A stretch of DNA of 56,855 bases. Source: Octopus sinensis. Lineage: Eukaryota. Below are positions 71 to 40,919 of the stretch, piece after piece. The stretch is from NCBI RefSeq assembly GCF_006345805.1, contig NW_021833934.1, positions 1-56,855 on the forward strand, written 5' to 3'. Each line of letters starts with the position of its first letter. The first letter of the stretch is position 1. The position numbers and the translations under genes are program-made. The notes under the pieces are model-generated. The model had not been told where the DNA came from. It was given only the letters and a program-made list of their open reading frames with translations, and ran no database searches.

Positions 71-71
71 C

Positions 72-515
72 TGGCCCCCGTCTGGTGGCACGTAAAAGCA
101 CCATCCGTTCATGTCCGTTGCCAGCCTCGCCTGGCCCCTATGCCGGTGACACGTAAAAGCACCATCCGGTCGTGTCCGTTTTGCCAGCCTCGCCTGGCCC
201 CTGTGCCGGTGACATGTAAAAGCACCATCCGTTCGTGCCGTTTACCAGCCTCGGCCTGGCCCCCCGTGCCGGTGACACGTAAAAGCACCATCCGTTTGTG
301 GCCGTTGTGCCAGCTCTGTCTGGCACCTGTGTGGGTGGCACATAAAAAGCACCCACTACACTCACGGAGTGGTTGGCGTTAGGAAGGGCATCCAGCTGTA
401 GAAACACTGCCAGATCTGACTGGGCCTGACGAAGCCTTCCAGCTTCACAGACCCCAGTTGAACCGTCCAACCCATGCTAGCATGGAAAGCGGACGCTAAA
501 TGATGATGATGATGA
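72..515 (+). mobile_element. Retroposon family D with ~60-bp internal tandem repeats and (ATG)n tail
   Basis: Repeated gtaaaagcaccatcc...gccggtg units, then ggcgttaggaagggcatccagc core and ccaacccatgctagcatggaaagcggacgctaaa(tga)n; recurs many times in the window. Confidence 0.8.
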
Positions 516-5345: not shown

Positions 5346-6265
5346 TATAAAGGTAGGAGAGTGAAAGGTAGGAGAGTCCAGTTTGCTGGACATTGTTGTA
5401 GAGCTGAAAAAGAAGTAATTTCTACTCTTCTCCTCTGGAAGCCATCTACTCGCGATACCAGAGGGCGCACACTCTTCGAGAGGCAGTTGGATGGAACCTA
5501 CACTCGCCTCCTTATGAGAGCCCAAAATCTCTCGTGGAAGAGTCATCCAACCAAAGTACAAATATATGGGAAACTACCACCTGTATCATCTCTTGTGAAA
5601 GGTAGGAGAGTCCAGTTTGCTGGACATTGTTGTAGAGCTGAAAAAGAGGTAATTTCTACTCTTCTCCTCTGGAAGCCATCTACTTGCGATACCAGAGGGT
5701 GCACACTCTCCTACCCTGATGTAATCTCCAGGGATACAGGCATCCAGCAACAGGACCTCCGTAATGCCATGATGGACCGTGAAGTCTGGCGTAGCATGGT
5801 AAATTCCATTGTCTCGACCACGGTCGCGATACCAGAGGGTGCACACTCTCCTACCGTGATGTAATCTCCAGGGATACAGGCATCCAGCAACAGGACCTCC
5901 GTAATGCTATGATGGACCGTGAAGTCTGGCGTAGCATGGTAAATTCCATTGTCTCGACCACGGTCGCGATACCAGAGGGTGCACACTCTCCTACCGTGAT
6001 GTAATCTCCAGGGATACAGGCATCCAGCAACAGGACCTCCGTAATGCTATGATGGACCGTGAAGTCTGGCGTAGCATGGTAAATTCCATTGTCTCGACCA
6101 CGGTCGCGATACCAGAGGGTGCACACTCTCCTACCGTGATGTAATCTCCAGGGATACAGGCATCCAGCAACAGGGCCTCCGTAATGTCATGATGGACCGT
6201 GAAGTCTGGCGTAGCATGGTAAATTCCATTGCCTCGACCACGGTCGAACAATGATGATGATGATG
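5346..6265 (+). mobile_element. RTE-clade LINE 3' end (RT C-terminus) with four 140-bp tandem copies and (TGA)n tail
   Basis: Translates LDGTYTRLLMRAQNLSWKSHPTKVQIYGKLPPVSSLVKGRRVQFAGHC...MMDREVWRSMVNSIVSTTVEQ*, matching the RTE motif pattern LDG.YTR.LR...W...GH; repeats at 5686, 5826, 5966, 6106. Confidence 0.8.
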
Positions 6266-9519: not shown

Positions 9520-11240
9520 TCTCTCTCTTTTACTTGTTTCAGTCATTTGACTGCAGCCATGCTGGAGCACCGCCTTCTAGTTGAGTAAATCGACCCCAGG
9601 ACTTATTCTTTGTAAGCCCAGCACTTAGTCTATCAGTCCCTTTTGCTGAACTGCTAAGTTACGGGGACGTAAACACCCAGCATCGGTTGTCAAGCGATGT
9701 GGGGGACAACACAGAACCACAAAAAATACACACACATACATATATATATACATATATACGACGGGCTTCTTTCAGTTTCCGTCTACCAAATCCACTCACA
9801 AGGCTTTGGTCGGCCCAAGGCTATAGTAGAAGACACTTTCCCAAGGTGTCATGCAGTGGGAATGAACCAGGAACCATGTGGTTGGTAAGCAAGCTTCTTA
9901 CCGCAGAGACACTCCGCCTATATATATGTATACATATATACGATGGGCTTCTTTCAGTTTCCATCAACCAAATCCACTCACAAGGCTTTGGTCGGCCCAA
10001 GGCTATAATAGAAGAGACTTGCCCAAGGTGCCACGCAGTGGGAATGAACCCCCAGAACCATGTGGTGGTAAGCAAGCTACTTACCACACAGCCACTCCTG
10101 CACCTATATATATATAATATATACACCTATATACGATGGGCTTCTTTCAGTTTCCATCAACCAAATCCACTCACAAGGCTTTGGTCGGCCCAAGGCTATA
10201 ATAGAAGAGACTTGCCCAAGGTGCCACTCAGTGGGAATGAACCCAGAACCATGTGGTTGGTAAGCAAGCTACTTACCACACAGCCACTCCTGCACCTATA
10301 TATATATATATATATACACATATATACGATGGGCTTCTTTCAGTTTCCATCAACCAAATCCACTCACAAGGACTTGGTCGGCCTGAGGCTATAGTGGAAG
10401 ATACTTGCCCAAGGTGCCACGCAGTGGGAATGAACCCGGAACCATGTGGTTGGTAAGCAAGCTTCTTACCGCAGAGCCACTCCACCTATATATATGTATA
10501 CATATATACGATGGGCTTCTTTCAGTTTCCATCAACCAAATCCACTCACAAGGCTTTGGTCGGCCCAAGGCTATAATAGAAGAGACTTGCCCAAGGTGCC
10601 ACGCAGTGGGAATGAACCCAGAACCATGTGGTTGGTAAGCAAGCTACTTACCACACAGCCACTCCTGCACCTATATATATATATATATATATACACATAT
10701 ATACGATGGGCTTCTTTCAGTTTCCATCAACCAAATCCACTCACAAGGCTTTGGTCGGCCCAAGGCTATAGTAGAAGACACTTTCCCAAGGTGCCACGCA
10801 GTGGGAATGAACCCGGAACCATGTGGTTGGTAAGCAAGCTACTTACCACACAGCCACTCCTGCGCCTATATATATATATATATACACATATATACGATGG
10901 GCTTCTTTCAGTTTCCATCAACCAAATCCACTCACAAGGACTTGGTCGGCCTGAGGCTATAGTGGAAGATACTTGCCCAAGGTGCCACGCAGTGGGAATG
11001 AACCCGGAACCATGTGGTTGGTAAGCAAGCTTCTTACCGCAGAGCACTCCCTCACCTATATTATATACATTATATACGATGGGCTTCTTTCAGTTTCCAT
11101 CAACCAAATCCACTCACAAGGCTTTGGTCGGCCCAAGGCTATAATAGAAGAGACTTGCCCAAGTGCCACGCAGTGGGAATGAACCCGGAACCATGTGGTT
11201 GGTAAGCAAGCTACTTACCACACAGCCACTCCTGCGCCTA
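9520..11240 (-). repeat. Tandem array of eight SINE-A head/core units (~180-195 bp) plus one tail
   Basis: Units start near 9757, 9938, 10132, 10325, 10507, 10702, 10893 and 11075, separated by TA runs. Confidence 0.9.
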
Positions 11241-11784
11241 TTCACTTTTTAATTATTTTGCTATCTCACCGATTTCTTCCGTCTTGTCCACGTGACATTT
11301 CAACCATTTGTTATTCACTACGCTTGCACTTTAAAAGTGCATTATGATGTGATAAAGAAAGAATGGCTTCTTCTGGTCATTTTTAACTGCTGTTTTTTCA
11401 CTTCCCCCAAATGGTGACTTATTACGACTGAATAATGGACAATAACAAATGGCTGAAATGTTATGCAGGCAATAAAGAAGTCAATATGATCGCACAACGG
11501 CGACAAATTAAATATCTATGTGTATTCACTGTTTTCTTCGAACGATTAATTATTTCTCTAATAATGGAAAGAATGAAATCTGAATCGTCTCAACTGGATT
11601 TTCAGAAAGGAAAAGTGGTAAGAATATTCAGACTAACCAACCGCAAACATTAGTACATAAGCACAAGAATGATAAGCAGAATTATCAATCAGTAATAGTG
11701 CAAAACTGGTGCCTGCTTGGATAACATATACCCACCAACAAAATTTTGGGTGGGGGGAGAAATTTTTTGAAAACCGGCATCTGT

Positions 11785-14001: not shown

Positions 14002-14384
14002 TGTAGCAATAAACATTTTAGCCATTTTAAAATATGGCGCTAATTGGCAATATGACGTAATGTCGTATTGGCGAAGAATTATTATTTTTGTTTTTTCCAT
14101 TAGTTAATATAACTGCTCATATAAAGATTCTAAATGTTTCGTAAAGAATATTTGTAATGGATTTCGATTCTTTTAAGTCAAGTTGAGCAGTTATAAAAAC
14201 CCTGGATTTTGGGAAAAACTTCAGTGTTTGTTGGATGTCACTAAACTCCACGACACTCACTCTTTCGAGACATCGGTAATTTTTATGCCCTGTCTAAGTT
14301 AATCACAAATCTATTTTGATTTGTTGATTAATGTATTAGTTAGAATTACGAATTAGTTAATGAATTTATAGTCATTATTCTACA
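14002..14384 (+). mobile_element. Solo LTR of a Gypsy-type element
   Basis: TGTAG...CTACA termini; first ~125 bp homologous to 21765-21891, which follows a Gypsy pol end; no clear TSD. Confidence 0.65.
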
Positions 14385-14411
14385 CGATGGAAAATTATCT
14401 TTCCTTCCTAC

Positions 14412-14657
14412 TGTCTATCTATCTATCCGATCAGTCGAAGTCGACTCTCGGTTACTCAATGGATCAGTGTCCTCCAGTCAGTTCTATCCTGGGCCGCTTT
14501 TTTCAGATTGGCTATGTCCATTCCGGCATCACTCTTGATGGTGTCAAGCCAGAGGGGTTCTTGGTCGGCCTCTTCCTCTCTTGCCACTGACCATTCCGAG
14601 TATGATGTCCTTCTCCAGGGATTTTCTCCGCATAATATGACCAAAATATGCCAATCT
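14412..14657 (-). mobile_element. BovB-like RTE LINE 3' fragment
   Basis: Reverse frames give AYFGHIMRRKSLEKDIILGMVSGKRGRGRPR..WLDTIKSD...DRTDWRTLIH; (GATA)n tail. Confidence 0.8.
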
Positions 14658-14877
14658 ATGCTACAGTAAATAATATAAAATGTTATATTTATATAATAAA
14701 ACTAATTAAGAAAATGTTTCTCTTCATGTTTGTTTTTTCAACTGAGAATAAATAAATATGCATTTCTGTAATCATTAGTTTATATTTTCTTACAGCGGTT
14801 AAAAGGACACGAAGAAAATATTCAACATACATGTCGTTAATATTCATAACATTTCATGAGTATATCTCTCTATGACG

Positions 14878-15188
14878 TTATCACCGTGACTGACCAGGCT
14901 ATCAGATGTTGCTACACATCGCTGGTCACAATGCGCTTTGCATTTTTTTTTTTAGCCTTCAAATGACGCCACCTCGCTGGCTAAGCGAGCAGGCCAACAG
15001 AAGAAAGAGTGAGAGAAAGTTGTGGCAAAAGAGTACAGTAGGGATTGCCACCACCCCCTGCCGGAGCCACGTTGAGCTTTAGGTGTTTTCACTCAATAAA
15101 CACTCACAACGCCCGATCTGGGAATCGAAACCGCGATCCTCTGACCGCGAGTCCGCTGCCCTAACCACTGGGCCATTGCGCCTCCACC
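14878..15188 (-). mobile_element. tRNA-headed SINE family B, tail type 1
   Basis: Head ggtggaggcgcaatggcccagtggttagggcagcggactcgcggtc...gtttcgattccc. Confidence 0.8.
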
Positions 15189-16400: not shown

Positions 16401-16746
16401 ATCTATGTATTTATTTATTTTAGGTAGGACTGTATATATGTATTTGCGACTCCAAGAAAACGAACATTGGAGTATCTACACGCTGTACCTTAAAGAACAG
16501 CTGCAAGAGAGGTAAGCCCTGTTCATTGTGCAACAACATGGGTGAAGTGAATTCCATCAGAAATCATAACAGAAATGTTATGATTTATACAGAAGGTGGA
16601 ACATGTAGAGATTCCCATTTGGTGCACGCTGCAGAATGCACGAAACACAACTTAATTTGTGTTGATTGCACAACAGAACAATTAAATAAACGGTTTAATG
16701 GGCACAGATTCGACGTCAGGCACATTCGCTTTCACTTCTCAGAATG
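16401..16746 (+). mobile_element. Penelope GIY-YIG endonuclease relic (internally deleted copy)
   Basis: CKRGKPCSLCNNM...GGTCRDSHLVHAAECTKHNLICVDCTTEQLNKRFNGHRFDVRH: Cys linker plus degenerate GIY-YIG with R..GH motif. Confidence 0.75.
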
Positions 16747-16789
16747 TTTGATCCATCGAGTAACCGAGAGTTGACTTTGACTGAGCGGA

Positions 16790-17256
16790 TTGCCTTTCAT
16801 CCTTTCGGGGGTCGATTAAATAAGTACCAGTTACGCACTGGGGGGGGGGGCGATATAATCGACTTAATCCGTTTGTCTCCTCTGTGTTTAGCCCCTTGTG
16901 GACAGTAAAGAAATAGGTATTTCGTTTGCCGCTACGTTCTGAGTTCAAATTCCGCCGAGGTCGACTTTGCATTTCATCCTTTCGGGGTCGATTAAATAAG
17001 TACCAGTTACGCACTGGGGTCGATATAATCGACTTAATCCGTTTGTCTCCTCTGTGTTTAGCCCCTTGTGGACAGTAAAGAAATAGGTATTTCGTTTGCC
17101 GCTACGTTCTGAGTTCAAATTCCGCCGAGGTCGACTTTGCATTTCATTCTTTCGGGGTCGATTAAATAAGTACCAGTTACGCAATGGGGTCGATATAATC
17201 GACTTAATCCGTTTGTCCCCTCTGTGTTTAGCCCCTTGTGGGTAGTAAAGAAATAG
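16790..17256 (+). mobile_element. SINE family C headless tandem multimer (3 units)
   Basis: Repeated ~165-bp body joined by aaagaaataggtatttc. Confidence 0.85.
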
Positions 17257-17264
17257 ATAGATAG

Positions 17265-17616
17265 AATGATTATGTAACTCGTCTTAAGAGATTTCTTACT
17301 GATTTTCCTTCTTTTACAAGACAATTGCAAAATGTTAAAAGTTTTGTTCATTCTGATATAAATTCTTGAACACATGTATTTGTACGTAACGATGCTACTC
17401 ATAATTCATTGAAAAATAAATACACTGGACCTTTTAAAGTCTTGTCAGTTAGAGACAAAACTATGACTTTGGAGATGAATGGTAAAAGAAAAAGAGATTG
17501 TCAGTGTAGACAGAGTAAAAAAAAGCTTATTTCGATCAATATTCATGTCATGAAAATCAAGGTGTGAGCAATACATATCGACATAACTTGAAACAAAGCG
17601 ATAATCAAAGAAACAG
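17265..17616 (+). mobile_element. Gypsy pol C-terminus (integrase GPY/F region), degenerate
   Basis: THVFVRNDATHNSLKNKYTGPFKVLSVRDKTMTLEMNGK../EIVSVDRVKKAY. Confidence 0.8.
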
Positions 17617-20600
17617 GGATCTTTTCCTTTTGAACGGCACATGTCAACACAAAGCTCAGAATTTTAGCATCCACAGTAGTATTTTCAATGTCCGTGAATA
17701 AAGTTTGCTTTTAAATGTAATTAATGCAAGACACAGCGAGGTTTCTTTCTCTGATGATTTACATTTCCAACCACTGGAACATGTTCTCTCAGAGAGTGAT
17801 GCTGTGGACCTACACAAATGAACGTGTTAAAAACAAAATAGAATTTTTGGATCTTTTCCTTTTGAACAGCACATGTCAACACAATTTCTAGTTAACTAAA
17901 CACTTTAAAACTTCGATACTGGTAGAATGTGTCAAAATAAAACATTTTTTTGGATCTTTTCCTTTTGAACGGCACATGTCAACACAATTTCTACTAACTA
18001 AACACTTTAAAACTTCGTATAATGGTAGAATGTGTCAAAATAAAACATCTTCTTTGGGGGGATCTTTTCCTTTTGAACGGCACATGTCAACACAATTTCT
18101 AGTTAACTAAACACTTTAAAACTTCGATACTGGTAGAATGTGTCAAAATAAAACATTTTTGGGGGGGATCTTTTCCTTTTGAACGGCACATGTCAACACA
18201 ATTTCTAGTTAACTAAACACTTTAAAACTTCGTATACTGGTAGAATGTGTCAAAATAAAACATTTTTTGGGGGGATCTTTTCCTTTTGAACGGCACATGT
18301 CAACACAATTTCTATTAACTAAACACTTTAAAACTTCGATACTGGTAGAATGTGTCAAAATAAAACATTTTTGGGGGGGATCTTTTCCTTTTGAACGGCA
18401 CATGTCAACACAATTTCTATTAACTAAACACTTTAAAACTTCGATACTGGTAGAATGTGTCAAAATAAAACATTTTTGGGGGGGATCTTTTCCTTTTGAA
18501 CGGCACATGTCAACACAATTTCTAGTTAACTCAAACACTTAAAAACTTCGTATACTGGTAGAATGTGTCAAATATAAAACATTTTTTGGGGGGATCTTTT
18601 CCTTTTGAACGGCACATGTCAACACAATTTCTATAAATAAAACCACTTTAAAACTTCGATACTGGTAGAATGTGTCAAAATAAAACATTTTTGGGGGGAT
18701 CTTTTCTTTTGAACGGCACATGTCAACACAATTTCTATTAACTAAACACTTTAAAACTTCGATACTGGTAGAATGTGTCAAAATAAAACATTTTTTGGGG
18801 GGATCTTTTCCTTTTGAACGGCACATGTCAACACAATTTCTATTAACTAAACACTTTAAAACTCGATACTGGTAGAATGTGTAAAAATAAAACATTTTTT
18901 GGGGGGATATTTTCCTTTGGACCGGCACATGTCAACACAATTTCTATTACTAAACACTTTAAATTCGATTGACTTAGAATGATGTCAAGAATGTGTGTAA
19001 ATAAACATTTTTTAAAAATCTTTTCCTTTTGAACGGCACATGACAACACAATTTCTAGTTAACTAAACACTTTAAAACTTCGATACTGGTAGAAAATGTG
19101 TCAAAATTAAAACATTTTTTAAAAATCTTTTCCTTTTGAACGGCACATGTCAACACAATTCTAGTTAACTAAACATTTAAAACTTCGTATACTGGTTAGA
19201 ATGTGTCAAAATAAAACATTTTTTAATCTTTTCTTTGAACGGCACATGACAACACAATTCTAGTTAACTAAACACTTTTAAAACTTCGATTACTGGTTAG
19301 AAAGAATGTGTCAAAAAAAAAAACATTTTTAAAAAATCTTTTCCTTTTGAACGGCACATGTCAACACAATTTCTAGTTAACCAAACACTTTAAAAACTTC
19401 GTATACTGGTAGAATGTGTCAAAATAAAACATTTTGTTAATCTTTTCCTTTTGAGGGCACATGTCAACACAATTTCTAGTTAAATAAACACTTTAAAACT
19501 TCGTATAATGGTAGAATGTGTCAAAATAAAACATCTTCTTTGGGGGGATTCTTTTCCTTTTGAACGGCACATGTCAACACAATTTCTAGTTAATAAACAC
19601 TTTAAAACTTCGATACTGGTAGAATGTGTCAAAATAAAACATTTTTGGGGGGGATCTTTTCCTTTTGAACGGCACATGTCAACACAATTTCTAGTTAACT
19701 AACCACTTTAAAACTTCGTTATACTGGTAGAATGTGTCAAAAAAAACATTTTTGGGGGGATCTTTTCCTTTTGAACGGCACAGTCACAACACAATTTCTA
19801 TTAACTAAACACTTTAAAACTTCGATACTGGTAGAATGTGTCAAAATAAAACATTTTTTGGGTGGGATCTTTTCCTTTTGAACGGCCACATGTCAACACA
19901 ATTTCTATTAACTAACCACTTTAAAACTTCGATACTGGTAGAATGTGTCAAAATAAAACATTTTTGGGGGGGATCTTTTCCTTTTGAACGGCACATGTCA
20001 ACACAATTTCTAGTTAACTAAACACTTTAAAACTTCGTATACTGGTAGAATGTTGTCAAATAAAAAACATTTTTTGGGGGGATCTTTTCCTTTTGAACGG
20101 CACATGTCAACACAATTTCTATTAACTAAACACTTTAAAACTTCGATACTGGTAGAATGTGTCAAAATAAAACATTTTTGGGGGGGATCTTTTCCTTTTG
20201 AACGGCACATGTCAACACAATTTCTATTAACTAAACACTTTAAAACTTCGATACTGGTAGAATGTGTCAAAATAAAACATTTTTTGGGGGGGATCTTTTC
20301 CTTTTGAACGGCACATGTCAACACAATTTCTATTAACTAAACACTTTAAAACTTCGATACTGGTAGAATGTTGTAAAAATAAAACATTTTTTGGGGGGAT
20401 ATTTTCCTTTGGAGGCACTGTCAACACAATTTCTATTAACTAAAAACTTTAAAACTTCGATACTGGTAGAATGTGTCAAATAATAAACATTTTTTAAAAA
20501 TCTTTTCCTTTTGAACGGCACATGACAACACAATTTCTAGTTAACTAAACACTTTAAAACTTCGATACTGGTAGAATGTGTCAAAATAAAACATTTTTTA

Positions 20601-21422
20601 AAAATCTTTTCCTTTTGAACGGCACATGTCAACACAATTTCTAGTTAACTAAACACTTTAAAACTTCGTATACTGGTAGAATGTGTCAAAATAAAACATT
20701 TTTTTAATCTTTTTCTTTTGAACGGCACATGACAACACAATTTCTAGTTAACTAAACACTTTAAAACTTCGATACTGGTAGAATGTGTCAAAATAAAACA
20801 TTTTAAAAAATCTTTTCCTTTTGAACGGCACATGTCAACACAATTTCTAGTTAACCAAACACTTTAAAACTTCGTATACTGGTAGAATGTGTCAAAATAA
20901 AACATTTTTTTAATCTTTTCCTTTTGAGCGGCACATGTCAACACAATTTCTAGTTAACTAAACACTTTAAAACTTCGTATACTGGTAGAATGTGTTAAAA
21001 TAAAACATCTTTTTTGGATCTTTTCCTTTTGAACGGCACATGTCAACACGATTTCTATTAACTAAACACTTTAAAACTTCGTATACTGGTAGAATGTGTC
21101 AAAATAAAACATTTTTTAATCTTTTCCTTTTGAACGGACAATGTCAACACAATTTCTAGTTAACTAAACACTTTAAAAACTTCGTATACTGGTAGATGTG
21201 TTAAAATAAAACATCTTTTTTGGATCTTTTCCTTTTGAACGGCACATGTCAACACGATTTCTATTAACTAAACACTTTAAAACTTCGTATACTGGTAGAA
21301 TGTGTCAAAATAAAACATTTTTTTCCTCTTGGCTTTCTTGAGAAAATTGTAATTTGTTTGTTTAACGTAGTTTAATTAACTAGAAATTGTGTTGACATGT
21401 GCCATTCAAAAGGAAAAGATCC
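17617..21422. mobile_element. Non-autonomous TIR element (Merlin-like: GG termini, ~8-bp TSD) containing a satellite
   Basis: TIR ggatcttttccttttgaacggcacatgtcaacacaa at 17617, inverted at ~21387-21422; flanks agaaacag / aacaacag (6/8). Confidence 0.72.
17849..21324 (+). repeat. ~106-bp satellite, about 33 monomers, each beginning with the element's TIR
   Basis: Monomer gatcttttccttttgaacggcacatgtcaacacaatttctagttaactaaacactttaaaacttcgatactggtagaatgtgtcaaaataaaacatttttgggggg. Confidence 0.95.
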
Positions 21423-21430
21423 AACAACAG

Positions 21431-21891
21431 ATCTAAAGTTAATAGAAACACAAAGTCAATTTTGAAATCACCTACCGATGTGAAAAAGACTAGAAGTGGC
21501 AGAATTGTACATTTTCCGAAAAAACTTTCTCAGTTTGTTTGAGGATATCCAAAATATTCAGTGAAATGAAATGAACTGTAAATGAACATTATAATTGTAA
21601 AGCCGTATTGAAAAGGCTAATTTCAAATGTTAAACATGTAATTTATAAATGCATTGTATGTATTGGTGTGTTATAACCATTAATTCAAATGTTGTATCGA
21701 AAAAAATATGTATTACGAATTTCTTTTCGCAAAATTTTAACAATTTTTCTGGCGAGAGGCTGATTGTAGCAATAACCATTTTAGCCATTTTGAAATATGG
21801 CACGAATTGGCAATATGACGTAATGTCATTGCCGAATAATTATTATTTTCGTTTTTTCCATTCGTTAATATAACTACTCATATAAAGATTC
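21431..21891 (+). mobile_element. Gypsy pol end, 3' UTR, PPT-like tract and start of 3' LTR (from 21765)
   Basis: SILKSPTDVKKTRSGRIVHFPKKLSQFV* (TRSGR.V.FP motif); ggcgagagg precedes TGTAGCAATAA. Confidence 0.75.
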
Positions 21892-23100
21892 GGATCTTTT
21901 CCTTTTGAACGGCACTTGGATCTTTTCTTTTTGAAGGCCAGATTTTCCTAGTTAACTAAAAAATTCGAAACTTCGTATTCTGGTAGAATGTGTCAAAAGA
22001 AAACATTATTGTAAACAAAATTGAAAACAAAATTGTTATTCGTAACTTAAACGTAGTTTAATTTTTACGAATTTTAACCAATGAAATCCCAGCATTGCTG
22101 CGTTATCGATATTGATAAAGAAATATAGCAGACGCACCACACACACACACACACACATTTGCACAAGCACATAATAATTAATATATAAGCGTACACACAC
22201 ATACAAACCGACATACACACACACACACATCGTAATTAATATATAAGCGTACACACACATACAAACGGACATATACACACACATAGTAATTAATATATAA
22301 GCGTACACACACATACAAACGGACATATACATATACGCACACAACAAAAATACACGTTCGTGTTTTGCCACTTGCCGCAACAAATTTGCACAAAAGGTAA
22401 ATAAACCAGAAGAGGGGTGGGGTCAATGTTTCATCGTTTCGGGGTCGATAAATTAAGTACCAATTACGCACTGGTGTCGAGGATTTTTTTCCCAATTTAT
22501 ATCACAGCTCCCGACAAGCTGGGGGCATCCTTTTATGAAAAAATATTTCGCAAATTTTTACAATACTACTCACACTCCACGCGCAAACTCGAGACCGATT
22601 TAGGCATATTATTGTTTTTTTTGTTGTTGTTTCTGGCCCTTCAAAACCATGGGAGAAGCCTTTTCGGTAAAAAAAAATAAAGAAAATATTCAAAAAATAT
22701 CGTTAATATTTTTATTGGGTGACGAAATTAATCGATTTAAGAGATATAGCTGTTATTTCTAGCACATGTAGAAGACAGAAGAAGAGGTAAATAATTTGAG
22801 CTCGAATACTGCGATTTCATTGGTTAAAATTCTTAAAATTAAACTACGTTTAAGTTACGAATAACAATTTTGTTTTCAATTTTGTTTACAATAATGTTTT
22901 CTTTTGACACATTCTACCAGTATACGAAGTTTCAAATTTTTTAGTTAACTAGGAAAATCTGGCCTTCAAAATGAAAAGATCCCGGCATTTTGTAACATAA
23001 TTTCTAGGTAACTAAACGCTTTTAAACTTCGTATACTGGTAGAATGTGTTTATAAAACATCATTTTCTCTTGGCTTTATTGAGAAAATTCTATAGTTTGT
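21892..23100 (+). mobile_element. Third Merlin-like family member, inserted in the Gypsy LTR and itself interrupted
   Basis: ggatcttttccttttgaacggcactt at 21892 continues after 22990 as tgtaacataatttctaggtaactaaac; right end not found. Confidence 0.55.
21918..22982. mobile_element. Merlin-like MITE with ~190-bp TIRs and 8-bp TSD
   Basis: ggatcttttc...aaccaatgaaatc is mirrored at ~22795-22982; TSD cggcactt (21910-21917) / cggcattt (22983-22990). Confidence 0.8.
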
Positions 23101-23754
23101 AAGATATTTCGTCGGAAATTTCTTGCATTTCGGCAATTTTAACCAGTCAATTACCTCCATTGACGTAAATAACATTCTGTGCATAATGAATATGTCCCTC
23201 CTTTAAAAAACAGATTGGGTTTATTTACATTTGTGAAGAAAAAAAGATACCCTTCCCCAACCCCTAACCCTGCGGCTGTGGTAGGAAGACACTTGCTCAA
23301 GATACCATGCAGTGGGACTGAAACTGGAACCATATGGTTGGAATCGACAAATGAACATTAAATAAAATCTGTACTGCGAAAAATAAAAGGAAAGAAAGCG
23401 GAAAAAAAAAAACCAAGAGAGAAATTGTAAGCAAGAAGAAGAAGAAGAACAACAACAACAACAATAGCAATCAATTATATAATGGAATCAGAGTTTCCGG
23501 TTCTGAAAACCCAGATTTCCATCCATAATTGTTGCTGCAGTTGCCGTCGGATACGTTTCTCCGTAGCGGTGTGTTTGCTTGATTAATAGATTAAAGAATG
23601 ATTGTTATTCGTTTTTTTAGCGATATTGTATTACATACGACAATCACATGTTCTCTCGTTGCTTATCACATGCCGGAAAATGTATAAATAAAAACGAATA
23701 GATGAATTATGAATAAATATATAAAACAATGGCAGCTGACACATTTTTGCATAT

Positions 23755-26700
23755 CTATACACACACACACACACACACTCATGCATGTTCATACACACAC
23801 CTACACACACATACACACATAAATGCATACATAGACACACAGACACACACACCCATGCATGTTCATACACACACCTACACACACATAAATGCATACATAG
23901 ACACACAGACACACACACCAATGCATGTTCATACACACACCTACACACACATAAATGCATACATAGACACACAGACACACACACACTCATGCATGTTCAT
24001 ACACACACCTACACACACCTACAACCACACCCATGCATGTTCATACACACACCTACACACAAAATGATACATAGACACACAGACCACACACACTCATGCA
24101 TGTTCATACACACACCTACACACACATACACACATAAATGCATACATAGACACACAGACACCACAACTCATGCATGTTCATACACACACCTACACACACA
24201 TACACACATAAATGCATACATAGACACACAGACACACACACACTCATGCATGTTCATACACACACCTACACACACATACACACACATAAATGCCACATAG
24301 ACACACAGACACACACACACTAATGCATGTTCATACACACACCTACACACACATACACACATAAATGCATACATAGACACACAGACACACACACACTCAT
24401 GCATGTTCATACACACACACCTACACACACATACACACATAAATGCATACCACAGACACACAGACACACACGCACTCAGCATGTTCATACACACAACTAC
24501 ACACACATACACACATAAATGCATACATAGACACACAGATACACACACTCATGCATGTTCATACACACACCTACACACACATACACACATAAATGCATAC
24601 ATAGACACACACACACACCACACTAATGCATGTTCTACACCACACTACACACACAACACACATAAATGCATACATAGACACACAGACACACACACACTCA
24701 TGCATGTTCATACACCACACCTACACACAAATACAACATAAATGCATACATAGACACACAGACACACACCACACAACTCATGCATGTTCATACACACACC
24801 TACACACACATACACACATAAATGCATACATAGACACAGACACACACACACACTCATGCATGTTCATACACACACCTACACACACATACACACATAAATG
24901 CATACATAGACACACAGACACACACACACTCATGCATGTTCATACACACACCTACACACACATACACACATAAATGCATACATAGACACACAGACACACA
25001 CACACTAATGCATGTTCATACACACACCTACACACACATACACACATAAATGCATACATAGACACACACACACACACACTCATGCATGTTCATACACACA
25101 CCTACACACACATACACACATAAATGCATACATAGACACACAGACACACACACACTCATGCATGTTCATACACACACCTACACACACATACACACATAAA
25201 TGCATACATAGACACACAGACACACACACCCATGCATTGTTCATACACACACTACACACACATAAATGCATACATAGACACACAGACACACAACTCATTC
25301 ATGCAAAATACACACACCTACAACACATACACACATAAATGCATACATAGACACACAGACACACACACAACATGCATGTTCATACACACACCTACACACA
25401 ATACACAATAAATGCATACATAGACACACAGACACACACACACTAATGCATGTTCATACACACACCTACACACACATACACACATAAATGCATACATAGA
25501 CACACAGACCACCACACACCCATGCATGTTCATACACAACCTACACACACATAAATGCATACATAGACACACAGACACACACACTCATGCATGTTCATAC
25601 ACACACCTACAACACACATAAACACATAAATGCATACATAGACACACAGACCACACACACACTCATGCATGTTCATACACACACCTACACACACATACAC
25701 ACATAAATGCATACATAGACACACAGACACACACACACTCATGCATGTTCATACACACACCTACACACACATACACACATAAATGCATACATAGACACAC
25801 AGACACACACACACTCATGCATGTTCATACACACACCTACACACACATACACACATAAATGCATACATAGACACACAGACACACACACACTAATGCATGT
25901 TCATACACACACCTACACACACATACACACATAAATGCATAGCATAGACACATTACAGACACATCACACACTCATTGCATGTTCATACACACACATACAC
26001 ACACATACACACATAAATGCATACACAGAGACACACCAGACACACACACACTCATGCATGGTCATACACACACCTACACACACATACACACATCATGCAT
26101 TACATAGACACACAGACACACACACTCATGCATGTTCATACACACACCTAACACACCATACACACATTAAATGCATACATAGACACACACCACACACACA
26201 CACTAATGCATGTTCATACACACACCTACACACACATACACACATAAATGCATACATAGACACACAGACACACACACTCATGCATGTTCATACACACACC
26301 TACACACACCACATACACACATAAATGCATACATAGACACACAGACACAACACACTAATGCATGTTCATACACACACCTACACACACATAACACATAAAT
26401 GCATACATAGACACACAGACACACACACACTCATGCATGTTCATACACAACCCTACACACACATACAACATAAATGCATACATAGACACCACACACCACA
26501 CACACTCATGCATGTTCATACCACACACTACACACACATACACACATAAATGCATACATAGACACACACCACCACCCACTCATGCATGTTCTACACACAC
26601 CTACACACACATACACACATAAATGCATACATAGACACACAGACACACACACTCATGCATGTTCATACACACACCTACACACACATAACACACATAAATG

Positions 26701-29345
26701 CATACATAGACACACACCACACACACACTATGCATGTTTACACACACCTACACACACATACCACATAAATGCATACATAGACACAAGACACAGACACTCA
26801 TGATGTTCTACACACACCTACACACACATACACACATAAATGCATACATAGACACACACACACACACACTCATGCATGTTCATACACACACCTACACACA
26901 CATACACACATAAATGCATACATAGACACACAGACACACACACTCATGCATGTTCATACACACACCTACACACACATACACACATAAATGCATACATAGA
27001 CACACAGACACACACACCCATGCATGTTCATACACACACCTACACACACATACACACATAAATGCATACATAGACACACAGACACACACACTCATGCATG
27101 TTCATACACACACCTACACACACATACACACATAAATGCATACATAGACACACAGACACACACACCCATGCATTTCATACACAACACCTACACCCACATA
27201 CACACATAAATGCATACATAGACACACACACACACACACTCATGCATGTTCATACACACACCTACACACACATACACACATAAATGCATACATAGACACA
27301 CAGACACACACACTCATGCATGTTCATACACACACCTACACACACATACACACATAAATGCATACATAGACACACACACACACACATACATACTCATACA
27401 CACACCTACACACACATACACTCATGAAAGCGTACATACACACACATGCACACAGACACACATACACACAGACACACACACACTCATACATACTCATATA
27501 CACACACCTACACACATACACACAGACACACACACTCATGCATGTTCATACACACACCTACCCACACCATACACACATAAATGCATACATAGAACACAGA
27601 CACACACACCCATGCATGTTATACACACACCTACACACACATACACACATAAATGCATACATAGACACACACACACACTCATGCATGTTCATACACACAC
27701 CTACACACACATACACACATAAATGCATACATAGACACACAGACACACACACTCATGCATGTCATACACACACCTACACACTCATACACACATAAATGCA
27801 TACATAGACACACAGACACACACACACACACATACATACTCATACACACACCTACACACACATACACTCATGAAAGCGTACATACACACACATGCACACA
27901 GACACACATACACACAGACACACACACACACTCATACATACTCATATACACACACCTACACACATACACACACACACTCATACATACATACACACACAGG
28001 CACACATACGCACACACACTCATACATACTCATACACACACCTACACACATAAATGCATACATACACACACATGCACACAAACACACACACCTACACATA
28101 CATACACACATGATTGCATACATACACACACATACACACACACACACTCATACAGACTCATACACACACATACACACATAAATGCATACATACACACACA
28201 TACACACAGACACATACACGCACACACACTCATGCATACTCATACACACACCTACACACACATACACACATGACTGCGTACATACACACACATGCAGACA
28301 AACACACATATACACACAGACACACACACACACACACAAACGCATACATACACACACATGCACACAAACACACACACTCATACATACTCATACACACACC
28401 TACACACAACCACACACACATATACACATAAATGCATACATACACACACATGCACAGAATCACACAAAGACACACACACACTCATACATACTCATACACA
28501 TACCTACACACACATACACACATAAATGCATACATACACACACATGCACAGAATCACACAAAGACACACACACACTCATACATACTCATACACACACACC
28601 TAAACACACATACACACATAATTGCATACATACACACACATGCACACAAACACACATATACACACAGACACACACACACACTCATACATACTCATACACA
28701 CACCTACACACAACCACACACACATACACACATAAATGCATACATACACACACATGCAGACGAACACACATATACACACAGACACACACACACACCTACA
28801 CACACACATACACACATAAATGCATACATAGACACACAGACACACACACACACCTACACACATAATTGCATACATACACACACATGCACACAAACACACA
28901 CACACTCATACATACTCATACACACACCTATGCATACATACACATGCACAGAATCACACACAGACACACACACACCACCTACACACACATAATTGCATAC
29001 ATACACACACATGCACACAAACACACACACACTCATACATACTCATACACACACCTATGCATACATACACATGCACAGAATCACACACAGACACACACAC
29101 ACCACCTACACACACATAATTGCATACATACACACACATGCACACAAACACACATATACACACAGACACACACATACACACACCTACACACACATACATA
29201 CACACATGAACGCATACATACACACACATGCACACAAACACACATATACACACAGACACACACATACACACACCTACACACACATACATACACACATGAA
29301 CGCATACATACACACAGACACACACAAACACACACATACACAGAG
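23755..29345 (+). repeat. CA-rich ~74-bp minisatellite, 5.6 kb
   Basis: Unit catgcatgttcatacacacacctacacacacatacacacataaatgcatacatagacacacagacacacacact; period 74 at 26876/26950/27024/27098. Confidence 0.95.
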
Positions 29346-32529: not shown

Positions 32530-33170
32530 ATATACTCTTTTACTTGTTTCAGTCATTTGACTGCGGCCATGCTGGAGCACCGCCTTTAGTCGAGCAAATC
32601 GACCCCGGGACTTATTCTTTGTAAGCCCAGTACTTATTCTATCGGTCTCTGTTGCCGAACCGCTAAGTGACGGGGACATAAACACACCAGCATCAGTTGT
32701 CAAGCAATGCCAGGGGGACAAATACAGACACACACACATATACACACATACATACATATATATACACATATACGACGACGGGCTTCTTCAGTTTCCGTCT
32801 ACCAAATCCACTCACAAGGCGTTGTCGGGTCGGCCCGAGGCTATAGAAAGAACACTTGCCCAAGGTGCCACGCAGTGGGACTGAACCCGGAACCATGTGG
32901 TTGGTAAGGAAGCTACTTACCACACAGCCACTCCTGCATATATATATATATTATATATATTATAATATATATATATATATATATATTATATATACACACA
33001 CATATACGACGGGCTTCTTTCAGTTTCCGTCTACCAAATCCACTCACAAGGCTTGGTCGGCCCGAGGCTATAGCAGAAACACTTGCCCAAGGTGCCACAC
33101 GTGGGACTTGAACCCGGAACCATGTGGTTGGTAAGGAAGCTACTTACCACACCGCACTCCTGCGCCTATA
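32530..33170 (-). mobile_element. SINE family A with duplicated head
   Basis: Tail, spacer and two head/core units. Confidence 0.85.
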
Positions 33171-33601
33171 TATATATATATATATTAAGCAATTGGGAAA
33201 ACAAATTTATTTATTTATTTATCAATATTTCGCAGAGGCAACAGGAGTGAATCAAGCTCGGAGAATTTTGTTCATTGGTGCTTATGAGACTGGTTATAGG
33301 GCCCAAGAGCAGTAGGTTCATATATCTGGTTAAAATTACATTTCCTTGGAATGCTCTTCAACGAACGCTAAAAATAATTATAATGACGTGTGGACAACAC
33401 GTATTTTTCAGATGGTTTGCCCCTTGTGTCATTTAATAAGCAAATACATTAACAAATAAATAAAAGAAAATTTTTACACTCCTTCACACACACACACACA
33501 CACACATATTTGCACACATATATATATACATATATATATATACTGTGATATACTCATATTTTTTGTTCTATTTCTTCTTCTTTGCATCAGCATACCTGTG
33601 A

Positions 33602-36721: not shown

Positions 36722-37085
36722 ATCATCATCATCATTATCATCGTTTAGCGTCCGCTTTCCATGCTAGCATGGGTTGGACAGTTCAACTGGGGTCTGGGAA
36801 GATAGAAGGCTGCACCAGGCTCCAGTCTGATCTGGCAATGTTTCTACAGCTGAATGCCCTTCCTAATGCCAACCACTCCGTGAGTGTAGTGGGTGCTTTT
36901 TACGTGCCACCGGCACAGGTGCCAGACGAGTCTGGCAAACGGCCATGGACGGATGGTGCTTTTTATGTGCCACCGGCACAGGTGCCAGACGAATCTGGCA
37001 AACGGCCACGATCAGATGGTGCTTTTTACATGCCACCGGCACGGGTTATATATATATATACCAGTGCTTTTTACGTGGCACCATC
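36722..37085 (-). mobile_element. Retroposon family D
   Basis: (cat)n tail and internal ~60-bp repeats. Confidence 0.8.
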
Positions 37086-37311
37086 ACCATAAAAGAGTAA
37101 AAGATCAAAAGATTAAAAGATCAGTTCCTTATGGCTGTTTCTGCCAGGAGGCCACGACATCGTCCGTGCTACCTCCATCTCTTCAGTATTCTGTAGGGAT
37201 GGGTAGATAGAGTTTGGATGTTGAGTGTGCCTCTAGGCTTCTCCAGAGGCACTATCCCTTAGTTGGTTGACTTCCCAACTTCTAACTCTCATGGGAATAT
37301 ATATATATATA

Positions 37312-37895
37312 GGCACAGGAGTGGCTGTGTGGTAAGTAGCTTGTTTACCAACAACATGGTTCCGGGTTCAGTCCCACTGCGTGGCATCTTGGGCAAGTGT
37401 CTTCTGCTATAGCTCTGGGCCGACCAATGCCTTGTGAGTGGATTTGGTAGATGGAAACTGAAAGAAGTCCATCGTATATATAGGCGTAGGAGTGGCTGTG
37501 TTGTAAGTAGCTTGCTAACCAACCACATGGTTCCGGGTTCAGTCCCACTGCGTGGCATCTTGGGCAAGTGTCTTCTGCTATAGCCCCGGGCCGACCAAAG
37601 CCTTGTGAGTGGATTTGGTAGACGGAAACTGAAAGAAGCCCGTCGTATATATATGTATATATATATGTATGTGTGTGTATATGTTTGTGTGTCTGTGTTT
37701 GTCCCCCTAGCATTGCTTGACAACCGATGCTTGTGTGTTTATGTCCCCGTCACTTAGTGGTTCGGCAAAAGAGACTGATAGAATAAGTACTAGGCTTACA
37801 AAGAATAAGTTCCGGGGTCGAGTTGCTCGATTAAAAGCGGTGCTCCAGCATGGCCACAGTCAAATGACTGAAACAAGTAAAAGAGTAAAAGAGTA
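37312..37895 (+). mobile_element. SINE family A with duplicated head
   Basis: Two caggag/taggag heads, one tail. Confidence 0.85.
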
Positions 37896-37931: not shown

Positions 37932-38573
37932 TAAAAGGAGGCACCCAAAAATGACCAGAATCATTGTCTGTGGGACAAGCCCATTGTAGTTCAGGCTTCC
38001 AGTATTAGAAACTACTTGATATGATTCTCAGGTATCAGTCTGCTGACCAGTGGCATCAAGTGGGTACATCTTGGTTTCGCAGTCTTTCTCCTCTGTTTGT
38101 TGATTTTTGCAATGGTTGAATCAAAGGAACAGAATGCTTCTGTGAAATTCTGTTTTCTGCTGGGAGAAATGACGGCTGAAACAGCTGTCATATTTCAAAC
38201 AGAGTATAACGACACTGCCAAGAGCAAAACAAGTTTATAAGTGGTTTTGCTACTTCAGAAATGGTCACTTGAAGACCAACCTTGTTCAGGGCATGTCATA
38301 AACTAAAAGACCGGTTGAAAGATGATGCAGACCTTTTTTCGAAGGGTCATTACTGGTGACAAAAGCTGATGCTATGGAATTTGCAGATGTGGAAGAGGTG
38401 AAGAAAAAAAACGACAGAGGCATCAAACGAAAAAAATGAAAGGCATAAAAAGATGGGAAATGCATTGCTTTAAATGGAGAATACTTTGAAGGCGATAAAA
38501 GTGTAAACATGTAAAACTAAATGAATAAAATAACACTGCAAAATCCAGTTTCTTATGGGTAGCCCTCCATATA
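37932..38573 (+). mobile_element. Internally deleted mariner transposon relic
   Basis: From 38112 MVESKEQNASVKFCFLLG..TAET...YKWF..F..G..LEDQPCSG; then DDADLFSK/VITGDKS*CY and W.KCIALNGEYFEGD; degenerate TIRs ggaggcacccaaaaa / ttatgggtagccctcc. Confidence 0.8.
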
Positions 38574-38602
38574 TGTATGTATATATATATGTATATATAT
38601 AT

Positions 38603-39340
38603 CGTAAAAGCACCATCCGTTTGTGTCCGCTGCCAGCCTTGCCTGGCCCCCGTGCCGGTGGCACGTAAAAGCACCATCCGCTCATGTCCGTTGCCAGCAT
38701 CGCCTGGCCCCCATGCCGGTGGCACGTAAAAGCACCATCTGCACGTGTCGGTTGCCAGCCATGCCTGCCCCCGTCCCAGTGGCACGTAAAAGCACCATCC
38801 GCTCATGTCCGTTGCCAGCCTCGCCTGGCCCCCGTGCCGGTGGCATGTAAAAGCACCATCCGTTCGTGTCGGTTGCCAGCCACACCTGCCCCCGTCCCAG
38901 TGGCACGTAAAAGCACCATCCGCTCATGTCCGTTGCCAGCATCGCCTGGCCACCGTGCCGGTGGTACGTAAAAGCACCATCTGTTCATGTCCGTTGCCAG
39001 CCTCGCCTGGCCCCCGTGCCGGTGGCACGTAAAAGCACCATCCGTTCGTGGCCATTGCCAGCCTCGCCTGGCTCCCATGCTGGTGGCACGTAAAAAAACC
39101 ATCCGTCCATCCGTTTTGCCAGCTCCGTCTGGCACCTGTGCGGGTGGCATGTAAAAAGCACCCACTACACTCAGGAGTGGTTGGCGTTAGGAAGGGCATC
39201 CAGCCGTAGAAACACTGCCAGATCAGACTGGGCCTGATGCAGCCTTCTGGCTTCACAGACCCCAGTTGAACCATCCAACCCACGCTAGCATGGAAAGCGG
39301 ACGCTAAACGATGATGATGATGATAATGATGATGATGATA
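38603..39340 (+). mobile_element. Retroposon family D with nine 60-61-bp internal repeats
   Basis: Repeat starts 38603 to 39089, then core and (ATG)n tail. Confidence 0.85.
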
Positions 39341-40370: not shown

Positions 40371-40919
40371 AGATAGATAGATATTTAGATAGGCATGTAT
40401 ATAGATATATGTGTGTATTAAAGTATATAGATATGTGTATTTATATATAAATGTATGAATATACTTACATGCATGCATATATATATATACATTTATATGT
40501 GTGTGTATGTGTGTATAAGTATAGGTGTATGTACATGTATATAGATATAGGTATATATATGCGGGCACAAACACACATGTATATATAGATAGGGTTAGGG
40601 CTAATGTTTATATGTATATAGACATGTGTATATGTGTATGTATGTATATATATATATGTATATGAAACATATATATATATGTGTGTATGTGTGTATATAT
40701 ATATATGTGTGTGTGTTTGTGTATATATATGTGTGTGTGTGTGTGTATATATATATACATAACATATATATATACATACATATATATATGCATATATATT
40801 ATATTAAATTAGAGACAAAACCACTATTAGGCAAATCATACAATGAAACACTTAAGCCAATACATAAGATTATTTAATTTATATGCATATATATATATAC
40901 ATAACATATATATATATAT

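What the first reader, a model, noticed from the sequence alone, without database searches (positions are those of the whole stretch)
17617..21430. A transposon's own terminal repeat amplified into a satellite inside the element
Seen: the element starts and ends with an inverted ggatcttttccttttgaacggcacatgtcaacacaa, and ~33 internal 106-bp monomers each begin with that same terminal sequence. Removing 17617-21430 (element plus one 8-bp flank) rejoins the Gypsy frame ...KQSDNQRN-R-SKVNRNTKSILKSPTDVKKTRSGRIVHFP, which fixes the boundaries. Established: GG termini with 8-9-bp TSDs characterise Merlin/IS1016 elements. Inference: a satellite caught at birth from a MITE end. Each monomer is a potential transposase-binding end, so the array could be mobilised in variable lengths.
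Basis: partly seen in the sequence, partly recalled or inferred. Interest (0 to 1): 0.72.

Follow-up and report, generated by a model that had tools for sequence, protein, structure and literature searches.

The report
Transposon arm amplified into internal array
A small non-coding cut-and-paste transposon in an octopus genome has copied its own ~105-base end 33 times in a row inside itself, which is a real case of an already familiar way for satellite-like repeats to arise from mobile DNA.

Summary
Element A (17617-21422) has 36-nt terminal inverted repeats (35/36) and 33 head-to-tail ~105-bp monomers that each open with the terminal sequence. Two uninterrupted paralogues of the host retroelement (Octopus vulgaris, O. 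sinensis) show it is one insertion with an 8-bp target duplication.

New here: two relatives lie just downstream. B (21918-22982) has 179-nt arms and a 7/8 8-bp TSD. It is nested in the arm of C (from 21892), which has a single monomer. They show that the amplified unit is the first ~103 nt of a long family arm, not only the 36-nt TIR. They also show that A's last monomer plus its right end is a 201-nt hairpin MITE, the likely progenitor.

The array grew by block duplications of 14 and 2 monomers (99.2-99.5% substitution identity), probably in place.

GG termini, 8-bp TSD and TIR length fit Merlin, and Merlin transposases are reported as abundant in Octopus. No transposase could be linked, so membership is unproven. 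Use of monomers as alternative ends is untested. 14 of 33 monomers do not start with GGATC.

Close precedents exist (Tetris, Galileo, DTC84, miDNA4). I rate it a new member of a known kind, of moderate interest.

The parts
17265..17616 (+). Left flank: decayed C-terminal pol (integrase-tail) fragment of an LTR retroelement, the host of insertion A
   Evidence: About 91% nt identity to O. vulgaris L001 1537-1882 and 90% to O. sinensis L002 4256-4596. The translation carries frameshifts and a stop.
17609..17616 (.). Left copy of the 8-bp target-site duplication of A (AGAAACAG)
   Evidence: The paralogues carry a single AGAAACAA at this site. Among k=2-12 only k=8 gives a match, 6/8, with chance about 0.013.
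17617..17652 (+). Left terminal inverted repeat of A (36 nt, starts GG)
   Evidence: It is identical to the monomer consensus and matches the right end 35/36.
17653..17823 (+). Unrelated ~171-nt segment inside the leftmost unit ('unit 0'); origin unknown
   Evidence: No similarity to monomers, B, C, the rest of the window or L001-L004.
17824..17848 (+). Monomer-tail remnant closing unit 0
   Evidence: 17824-17951 matches 21198-21324 at 92%.
17849..21322 (+). Array of 33 direct ~105-bp monomers. Each equals positions 1 to ~103 of the family arm.
   Evidence: TRF, monomer list, arm alignment.
17952..19436 (+). 14-monomer block, first copy (m2-m15)
   Evidence: Monomer identity peaks at lag 14. 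There are 12 mismatches and 63 gap columns over 1508 aligned columns against 19437-20910.
19437..20910 (+). 14-monomer block, second copy (m16-m29)
   Evidence: 99.2% identity counting substitutions only.
20911..21322 (+). Two copies of a 2-monomer block (m30-31 and m32-33)
   Evidence: 1 mismatch and 4 gap columns over 208 aligned columns.
21222..21422 (+). 'Core': last monomer, inner arm segment and right TIR. This is a 201-nt hairpin MITE, the probable progenitor form.
   Evidence: DNA fold of -49.8 kcal/mol, z = -11.2. It is collinear with the arms of B and C.
21323..21369 (+). Inner arm segment, homologous to arm positions ~104-150 of B and C
   Evidence: alignment (CTCTTGGCTTT.TTGAGAAAATT...AACGTAGTTTAA).
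21370..21422 (-). Right terminal inverted repeat. It matches the monomers over 53 nt at 96%, and its outer 36 nt match the left end 35/36.
21423..21430 (.). Right copy of the 8-bp TSD of A (AACAACAG)
21431..21542 (+). Right flank: end of the pol reading frame (...HFPKKLSQFV*)
21892..21917 (+). Element C, left terminus (first 26 nt of its arm), split by insertion B. C carries only one monomer equivalent.
   Evidence: Homology to three uninterrupted copies stops exactly at ...ATAAAGATTC|GGATC.
21918..22982 (+). Element B: 1065-bp non-coding relative with 179-nt TIRs (21918-22096 and 22805-22982, 96% identical). It is nested in C's arm.
   Evidence: The arms contain the whole monomer homologue at about 78% identity.
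22983..22990 (.). Right copy of B's 8-bp TSD (CGGCATTT). The left copy is 21910-21917 (CGGCACTT).
   Evidence: 7/8 at k=8 only, chance about 0.003.
22991..23160 (+). Element C, continuation: rest of the single monomer plus inner arm. The right end is not present before the 5.6-kb repeat that starts at 23757.
   Evidence: 22994-23100 matches A 21251-21361 at 84%. No right TIR was found. The host LTR does not resume downstream.

Best explanation
Element A (17617-21422, 3,806 bp) is a non-autonomous cut-and-paste DNA transposon. It belongs to a local family with 5'-GGATC termini, long inverted arms and 8-bp target-site duplications. It inserted into the pol tail of an old LTR retroelement in an Octopus genome.

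Structure. The first ~103 nt of its left arm, counted from the terminal nucleotide, is present as 33 head-to-tail copies plus one rearranged terminal unit. About 47 nt of inner arm and a 36-53-nt right TIR follow. The last monomer plus the right end forms a 201-nt hairpin MITE. That is what the element probably looked like before amplification, and relative C still has a single unit.

Growth. The array grew as satellite DNA does, by unequal exchange or replication slippage in multi-monomer register. One 14-monomer and one 2-monomer duplication account for 16 of the 33 monomers. Both are nearly substitution-free, so they most likely happened in place after insertion.

Shown: boundaries, the 8-bp TSD, family relationships, arm homology and the block duplications.

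Inferred: the order of events, in-place growth, and how the first duplication arose. My preferred seed is a nested same-orientation insertion of a family member into an arm, followed by homologous deletion. B sitting inside C is a neighbouring example of such a nested insertion. That route would place the unit boundary exactly on the transposon terminus.

The superfamily is most likely Merlin. The array has no evident host function.
For: - TIRs and monomers.
- Empty sites in two paralogues (protein and DNA) fix the boundaries and an 8-bp duplication.
- Only k=8 gives a TSD match for A (6/8) and for B (7/8).
- The family arm alignment shows that a monomer equals arm positions 1 to ~103.
- C's left boundary falls exactly at GGATC against three uninterrupted copies.
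- The core folds as a hairpin with z = -11.2.
- Identity peaks at lag 14, and block identities are 99.2% and 99.5% (substitutions only).
- The oldest-looking junctions are a T-run followed directly by GGATC, with no flank bases.
- Merlin is described with GG termini, 8-9-bp TSDs and TIRs of 24-462 bp. 191 Merlin sequences are reported in O. bimaculoides (PMC8101967).
- Precedents for arm-repeat amplification: Tetris and Galileo (PMC4079207).
Against: - Only one amplified copy was seen, and no genome-wide survey was possible. I cannot show that the array did or did not exist when A transposed.
- The TSD is imperfect (6/8).
- No transposase was linked to the family.
- The ~171-nt foreign segment in the leftmost unit is unexplained.
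- Differences between the duplicated blocks are mostly 1-nt indels (63 gap columns against 12 substitutions). A second duplication in the window is also indel-rich. This looks like long-read consensus noise, so the exact monomer count, and conceivably the 14-monomer duplication itself, could be an assembly artefact.
Confidence: 0.75

Rival explanations
1. The array, or most of it, already existed when the element transposed. Each monomer is a working alternative left end, so transposase can pair any monomer with the right TIR and move sub-elements of variable length.
For: - 13 internal monomers carry a perfect 36-nt terminal sequence, and the monomers begin at terminal nucleotide 1.
- Family members differ in unit number: C has 1, B has 1 per arm, A has 34.
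- Extra transposase-binding repeats in arms are proposed for Galileo and Tetris (PMC4079207).
Against: - No second arrayed copy was found, and there is no evidence of excision from internal monomers.
- 14 of 33 monomers do not start with GGATC.
- Half of the array arose by 14- and 2-monomer duplications typical of unequal exchange.
- 17849-21422 on its own has no TSD: GAATTTTT versus AACAACAG, read.
Confidence: 0.15
2. Assembly inflation. The true locus holds a shorter array of about 17-19 monomers. The 14-monomer 'duplication' would then be a long-read assembly stutter.
For: The two blocks differ by 12 substitutions but 63 gap columns, mostly in homopolymers. Another recent duplication in the window is similarly indel-rich.
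Against: - The blocks carry 12 substitutions as well as small multi-nucleotide insertions and deletions in m11 and m14 relative to m25 and m28.
- The separate 2-monomer duplication shows that block duplication does occur here.
- The array would still hold at least 17 monomers.
Confidence: 0.15
3. The family belongs to a superfamily other than Merlin. Candidates are a Foldback/MULE-type element or another 8-bp-TSD superfamily, mobilised by that transposase.
For: - Long arms, hairpin structure and arm repeats are typical of foldback-type elements, and Tetris has 8-10-bp TSDs.
- An 8-bp TSD is not unique to Merlin (own knowledge).
Against: - GG termini, exactly 8-bp TSDs in two members and TIR lengths of 36-179 nt match the published Merlin description, and Merlin is abundant in Octopus.
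- hAT termini (YARNG, own knowledge) do not fit GGATC.
Confidence: 0.3
4. A pre-existing 105-bp satellite was captured between transposon ends, as proposed for Xenopus miDNA4. On this view it did not derive from the element's arm.
For: Capture is a published model for tandem repeats inside MITEs (PMC12628747).
Against: - The monomer is collinear over its whole length with the single-copy arms of relatives B (both arms) and C.
- It begins with the functional terminus itself.
- No free array occurs elsewhere in the window.
Confidence: 0.05

Closest known systems
Tetris foldback transposon and its TIR-220 satellite (Drosophila virilis; PMC4079207)
   Same: - Non-autonomous with long TIRs and 8-9-bp TSDs.
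- Tandem repeats inside an arm that probably began as a duplication of arm sequence.
- Copy-number change by unequal exchange, giving kb-size satellite-like arrays.
   Different: - Tetris repeats lie internal to an 866-bp flanking domain and share only a 37-bp stretch with it. Here each unit starts at terminal nucleotide 1 and carries the complete TIR.
- Here the repeats are on one arm only.
- TIR-220 arrays also occur free at many loci. That was not testable here.
Galileo (P superfamily) and classical FB elements of Drosophila
   Same: Arms carry tandem repeats, and these are proposed to hold extra transposase-binding sites (cited in PMC4079207).
   Different: - Different termini and TSD length: 7 bp for Galileo and 9 bp for FB (own knowledge).
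- Repeats occur in both arms.
- An autonomous partner is known for Galileo.
Tandem-repeat-containing MITEs of bivalve molluscs (DTC84 and pearl-like elements; PMC3879986)
   Same: - Mollusc host.
- A short non-coding element whose centre is a short array of ~100-170-bp core repeats with variable copy number.
   Different: - DTC84 has up to 5 repeats, a linked microsatellite, short inverted repeats and an AA putative TSD.
- Its repeats are not copies of the terminus.
- Some pearl-like carriers were later assigned to Helitron/Helentron elements (PMC7492417, title and abstract only).
Xenopus miDNA4 (Tc1/mariner MITE with internal satellite) and Xstir (review PMC12628747)
   Same: A MITE carrying one to many copies of a monomer. 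The proposed path runs from MITE to a long internal array to a free satellite after the ends decay.
   Different: - For miDNA4 the repeat is thought to have been captured, and the TSD is TA.
- Here the repeat is the arm itself, and the TSD is 8 bp.
Merlin superfamily (IS1016/IS1595-related; PMC8101967)
   Same: 5'-GG termini, 8-9-bp TSDs, TIRs of 24-462 bp, tandem repeats reported inside some copies, and many Merlin sequences in Octopus bimaculoides.
   Different: The defining DDE_Tnp_IS1595 transposase is not encoded here, and none could be linked to these termini.

Membership tests
Merlin superfamily | DDE_Tnp_IS1595 transposase, encoded by the element or by an autonomous partner with the same termini | not testable with these tools
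   A, B and C are non-coding. The ORFs inside the array exist only because 105 nt = 35 codons, and they have no homologues. No further copy of the terminus occurs in the window. No octopus genome could be searched by DNA.
Merlin superfamily | 8- or 9-bp target-site duplication | tested here: met
   A: two uninterrupted paralogues give exactly 8 bp. B: 7/8 at k=8 only.
Merlin superfamily | TIRs begin 5'-GG | tested here: met
   GGATC is found at both ends of A, both ends of B and the left end of C.
Merlin superfamily | TIR length within 24-462 bp | tested here: met
   A has 36-53 nt and B has 179 nt.
Foldback-type elements (FB, Tetris) | Long inverted arms making up much of the element and able to fold back | tested here: met
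   B's arms are 2 x 179 nt of 1065 bp at 96% identity. A's core is a 201-nt hairpin with z = -11.2.
Foldback-type elements (FB, Tetris) | Tandem subrepeats in both arms | tested here: not met
   A has 33 direct monomers on the left and a single inverted partial unit on the right. B has none.
hAT superfamily | 8-bp TSD together with YARNG (CAG/TAG-type) termini (feature from own knowledge) | tested here: not met
   The TSD length fits, but the termini are GGATC.
MITE | Short, non-coding, with TIRs and a TSD | tested here: met
   The core (201 nt) and B (1065 bp) qualify. A as a whole (3.8 kb) is oversized only because of the array.
MITE | High copy number in the genome | not testable with these tools
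   Three members lie within 5.4 kb of the window. None occur in 20 kb of Argonauta, a Logan contig or the L001/L002 loci.
Satellite DNA | Head-to-tail monomers evolving by block duplication and homogenisation | tested here: met
Satellite DNA | Long arrays at one or many loci, independent of the transposon ends | not testable with these tools
   Only one 3.5-kb array was seen, and it is fully enclosed by the TIRs. Two metagenome scans found nothing.

The most novel reading that the evidence does not exclude
The arm array is functional for the transposon. Each intact monomer would be a transposase-binding alternative left end. The element could then transpose at variable lengths, as an 'accordion' transposon, and shed arrays that seed a dispersed 105-bp satellite in octopus genomes. 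The first tandem duplication would itself be transposase-made, because the unit boundary falls exactly on the terminus.
Probability: 0.12. Interest if true: 0.6.

Novelty: new member of a known kind. Interest (0 to 1): 0.35.

Why it matters
This is a clean, boundary-resolved example of a tandem array still enclosed by the ends of the transposon it came from. The single-unit state (C) and a long-arm relative (B) sit next to it for comparison.

The literature search returned no paper on octopus TE-derived satellites, so it may extend the transposon-to-satellite route to cephalopods. Every unit carries a complete terminus, so the locus would be a convenient substrate for asking whether extra ends help or hinder transposition.

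It does not change current understanding. The same window holds several other TE-derived tandem arrays, so this kind of conversion looks routine in this genome.

Tried and rejected
1. I used the spurious ORFs of the array as a handle to find other arrays in the 5.8-billion-protein collection. Nothing was found.
2. I used a SINE-derived ORF to collect many octopus loci. At my cut-off of 1e-5 only 2 hits came back. Their loci, 20 kb of Argonauta hians and a 2-kb Logan contig, hold no family member.
3. Two exact-pattern scans of metagenome contigs with conserved monomer cores gave 0 matches.
4. A look-up of a window ORF to identify the source assembly found nothing on record.
5. Rfam found no family in 16500-23800 at E <= 0.1.
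6. Alternative TSD lengths. The frame argument also allows 2, 5 or 11 bp. These are rejected because only 8 bp gives gap-free protein and DNA alignments to the paralogues and a flank match.
7. A composite reading, in which 17849-21422 is a separate element inserted next to a solo end, is rejected. That sub-element has no TSD, and the paralogues show one insertion with one 8-bp duplication.
8. The monomer is not a complete tiny MITE with its own right TIR. The consensus aligned to its reverse complement shares only a 10-nt palindrome, TAGTTAACTA.
9. Pfam on the host-element paralogues gave no significant hit, only DUF285 at E 0.023, below its cut-off. 'Gypsy' versus another LTR superfamily stays open.
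Full report
**What is there.** The window is repeat-rich animal DNA. The closest relatives of the sequence flanking the finding are in Octopus vulgaris and O. sinensis. The reported terminal sequence GGATCTTTTCCTTTTGAACGGCACATGTCAACACAA lies at 17617-17652. It recurs inverted at 21387-21422 with one mismatch. It has 27 matches at three or fewer mismatches in the window, against none in 100 shuffles. Tandem Repeats Finder reports one array at 17849-21322 with period 105, 33.0 copies and 90% matches. I delimited 33 direct monomers of 99-112 nt. Thirteen carry a perfect 36-nt copy of the terminus and 19 begin GGATC. The rest begin AAATC, TAATC or GGATA.

**Boundaries and target duplication.** The flanks are a decayed pol tail of an LTR retroelement. 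Removing 17617-21430 rejoins the frame, but frame alone allows a duplication of 2, 5, 8 or 11 bp.
- A protein search with the joined flanks found an uninterrupted paralogue in O. vulgaris (P0001, 82% identity). The alignment is gap-free across the junction, QRN|RSKVN against QRNKSNVN.
- At the DNA level, the joined flanks align without a gap to that locus (L001). Keeping both flanks produces 8 gap columns at the junction.
- An O. sinensis paralogue (L002) is contiguous in the same way.
- Both paralogues carry a single AGAAACAA where the window has AGAAACAG, then the element, then AACAACAG.
- Among lengths 2-12, only 8 gives a flank match, 6/8, with chance about 0.013.

So 17617-21422 is one insertion with an 8-bp target-site duplication. 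I could not verify that the host element is a Gypsy. Pfam gave no significant hit; the only listed one, DUF285 at E 0.023, is below its cut-off.

**Two relatives next door change the picture.** While translating the downstream flank I noticed monomer-like peptides, which led to two more family members.
- Element B (21918-22982, 1065 bp, non-coding) has 179-nt inverted arms that are 96% identical. Its flanks are CGGCACTT and CGGCATTT, 7/8 at k=8 only, with chance about 0.003.
- B sits inside the left arm of element C, which starts at 21892. Homology of the window to three uninterrupted copies stops exactly at ...ATAAAGATTC|GGATC. The three copies are the window's own upstream LTR-like copy, L001 and L002.
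- C's right end is missing. The host LTR does not resume downstream, and a 5.6-kb AC-rich repeat begins at 23757.

Aligning the arms shows three things.
- The A monomer is collinear over its full length with arm positions 1 to ~103 of B (both arms, about 78% identity) and of C.
- C has exactly one such unit. It is followed by TTTTCTCTTGGCTTTATTGAGAAAATT, the same inner-arm sequence that follows A's last monomer.
- A's last monomer, its 47-nt inner segment and the right TIR form a 201-nt unit (21222-21422). As single-stranded DNA it folds into a near-perfect hairpin of -49.8 kcal/mol, z = -11.2.

The amplified unit is therefore the first ~103 nt of a long family arm, terminus included, and not only the 36-nt TIR. 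In line with this, the monomers match the right end over 53 nt at 96%. The outermost left copy diverges after nt 36 into about 171 nt of unrelated sequence. It then ends with a monomer tail at 17824-17848. I cannot explain that foreign segment.

**How the array grew.** Mean identity between monomers peaks at a lag of 14 units.
- Blocks 17952-19436 and 19437-20910 differ by 12 substitutions and 63 gap columns over 1508 aligned columns, which is 99.2% identity counting substitutions only.
- Units 30-31 and 32-33 form a second duplicate pair at 99.5%.

Sixteen of the 33 monomers thus come from two very recent block duplications, the ordinary signature of unequal exchange or slippage in satellite DNA. 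These events look younger than the insertion, whose TSD has already changed at 2 of 8 positions. They therefore probably happened in place. This is an inference from small numbers.

The excess of single-base indels, mostly in homopolymers, looks like long-read consensus error. Another 2.9-kb duplication in the window (38179-41028 and 41137-43827) is also indel-rich. The exact monomer count, and possibly the large duplication itself, needs confirmation from reads.

**Origin of the first duplication.** The oldest-looking junctions (unit 0/m1, m1/m2, m30/m31) are the arm's T-run joined directly to GGATC, with no flanking bases. The unit boundary therefore coincides with the transposon terminus. 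Random slippage would seldom hit that point. One route that would is a same-orientation insertion of a family member into another's arm, followed by homologous deletion. The window shows that nested insertion into an arm does occur in this family, since B sits in C. This step is a hypothesis.

**Superfamily.** According to PMC8101967, Merlin elements have TIRs of 24-462 bp with a conserved terminal 5'-GG and 8- or 9-bp TSDs. The same paper reports Merlin sequences as unusually numerous in Octopus bimaculoides, 191 in all. All three structural criteria are met here, but the defining DDE_Tnp_IS1595 transposase could not be tested.
- The elements are non-coding.
- The ORFs in the array exist only because 105 nt equals 35 codons, and they have no homologues.
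- No further copy of the terminus exists in the window.

Foldback-type affinity (long arms, hairpin, arm repeats, 8-10-bp TSDs in Tetris) remains a live alternative for how the element behaves. However, repeats in both arms, which is typical of such elements, are not seen.

**Comparison with what is known.**
- Tetris is the closest analogue (PMC4079207). It is a non-autonomous long-TIR element with 8-9-bp TSDs. Its arm-internal 220-bp repeats probably arose from arm sequence, vary in number by unequal crossing-over, and gave rise to satellite arrays.
- Galileo has arm repeats proposed to add transposase-binding sites.
- Molluscan MITEs with internal repeats, such as DTC84, are described in PMC3879986.
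- The MITE-to-satellite routes of Xenopus miDNA4 and Xstir are reviewed in PMC12628747.
- What differs here: every unit starts at the terminal nucleotide and carries a full TIR, only one arm is amplified, and the host is a cephalopod. My literature search returned no paper on octopus TE-derived satellites.

I therefore class this as a new member of a known kind.

**What could not be done.** No octopus genome can be searched by DNA. My indirect routes failed: spurious-ORF and SINE-ORF protein searches, two metagenome scans, 20 kb of Argonauta, a Logan contig and a window-ORF look-up. Rfam finds nothing in the region.

The claims that the array is a satellite at birth and that monomers act as alternative ends remain untested. 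Against the second claim, 14 of 33 monomers lack the GGATC start, and the sub-element 17849-21422 has no TSD of its own.

**Verdict.** This is a real, well-bounded and nicely documented case of a transposon arm amplified into an internal tandem array. The family is Merlin-compatible but unassigned. The mechanism is familiar, so interest is moderate (0.35).

Noticed in passing
window 21892-23160: A nested pair of the same transposon family. Element B (1065 bp, 179-nt TIRs, 8-bp TSD 7/8) is inserted at position 26 of the arm of element C. C is itself inserted in the 3' LTR-like region of the same retroelement that hosts A. That makes three family insertions within 5.4 kb.
   Followed up: yes
window 23757-29342: A 5.6-kb AC-rich array with a 74-bp higher-order unit (about 64 copies, 84% matches). 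It starts where element C and the host LTR should continue, so C's right end appears to have been lost or displaced.
   Followed up: partly
window 9736-11241; also 1058-1548, 16790-17256, 32756-33187, 37304-37653, 46701-47274: SINE-like units, some joined by AT/AC microsatellite, occur as tandem arrays (182 bp x 8, 170 bp x 2.7, 190 bp x 3 and others). TE-derived tandem arrays therefore seem routine in this genome, which puts the finding in context.
   Followed up: no
window 38179-41028 and 41137-43827: A tandem segmental duplication of about 2.9 kb at 95.5% identity, with 43 mismatches and 50 gap openings in 2314 bp. It includes 61-bp GC-rich minisatellite arrays. The high indel share suggests consensus errors from a long-read assembly.
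   Followed up: partly
window 14019-14884 versus 21782-21891: An LTR-like sequence upstream matches the region just after the pol stop, and also L001 and L002. The host retroelement seems to keep both LTR regions but only about 350 bp of pol upstream of A, with SINE arrays in between. It is a heavily deleted copy.
   Followed up: partly
window 5686-6246: A 140-bp unit repeated 4 times at 98% identity inside a LINE-like reading frame (peptides ...RDTGIQQQDLRNAMMDREVWRSMV...). This is another coding-TE fragment turned into a tandem array.
   Followed up: no
window 18209-20533, both strands: The monomer period of 105 nt equals 35 codons, so open frames run through several monomers (ORFs up to 129 aa). 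Gene finders could call these as proteins. They have no homologues in the protein collection.
   Followed up: yes
window 17653-17823: About 171 nt of sequence unrelated to anything else examined replaces the middle of the leftmost unit of element A. Its origin is unknown; capture during gap repair or an old insertion are possibilities.
   Followed up: partly
window 71-353, 36892-37046, 38603-39162, 41564-42004: A GC-rich 61-63-bp minisatellite (CGTAAAAGCACCATCCG...GGTGGCA) recurs at four places in both orientations. It is probably part of another dispersed repeat family.
   Followed up: no
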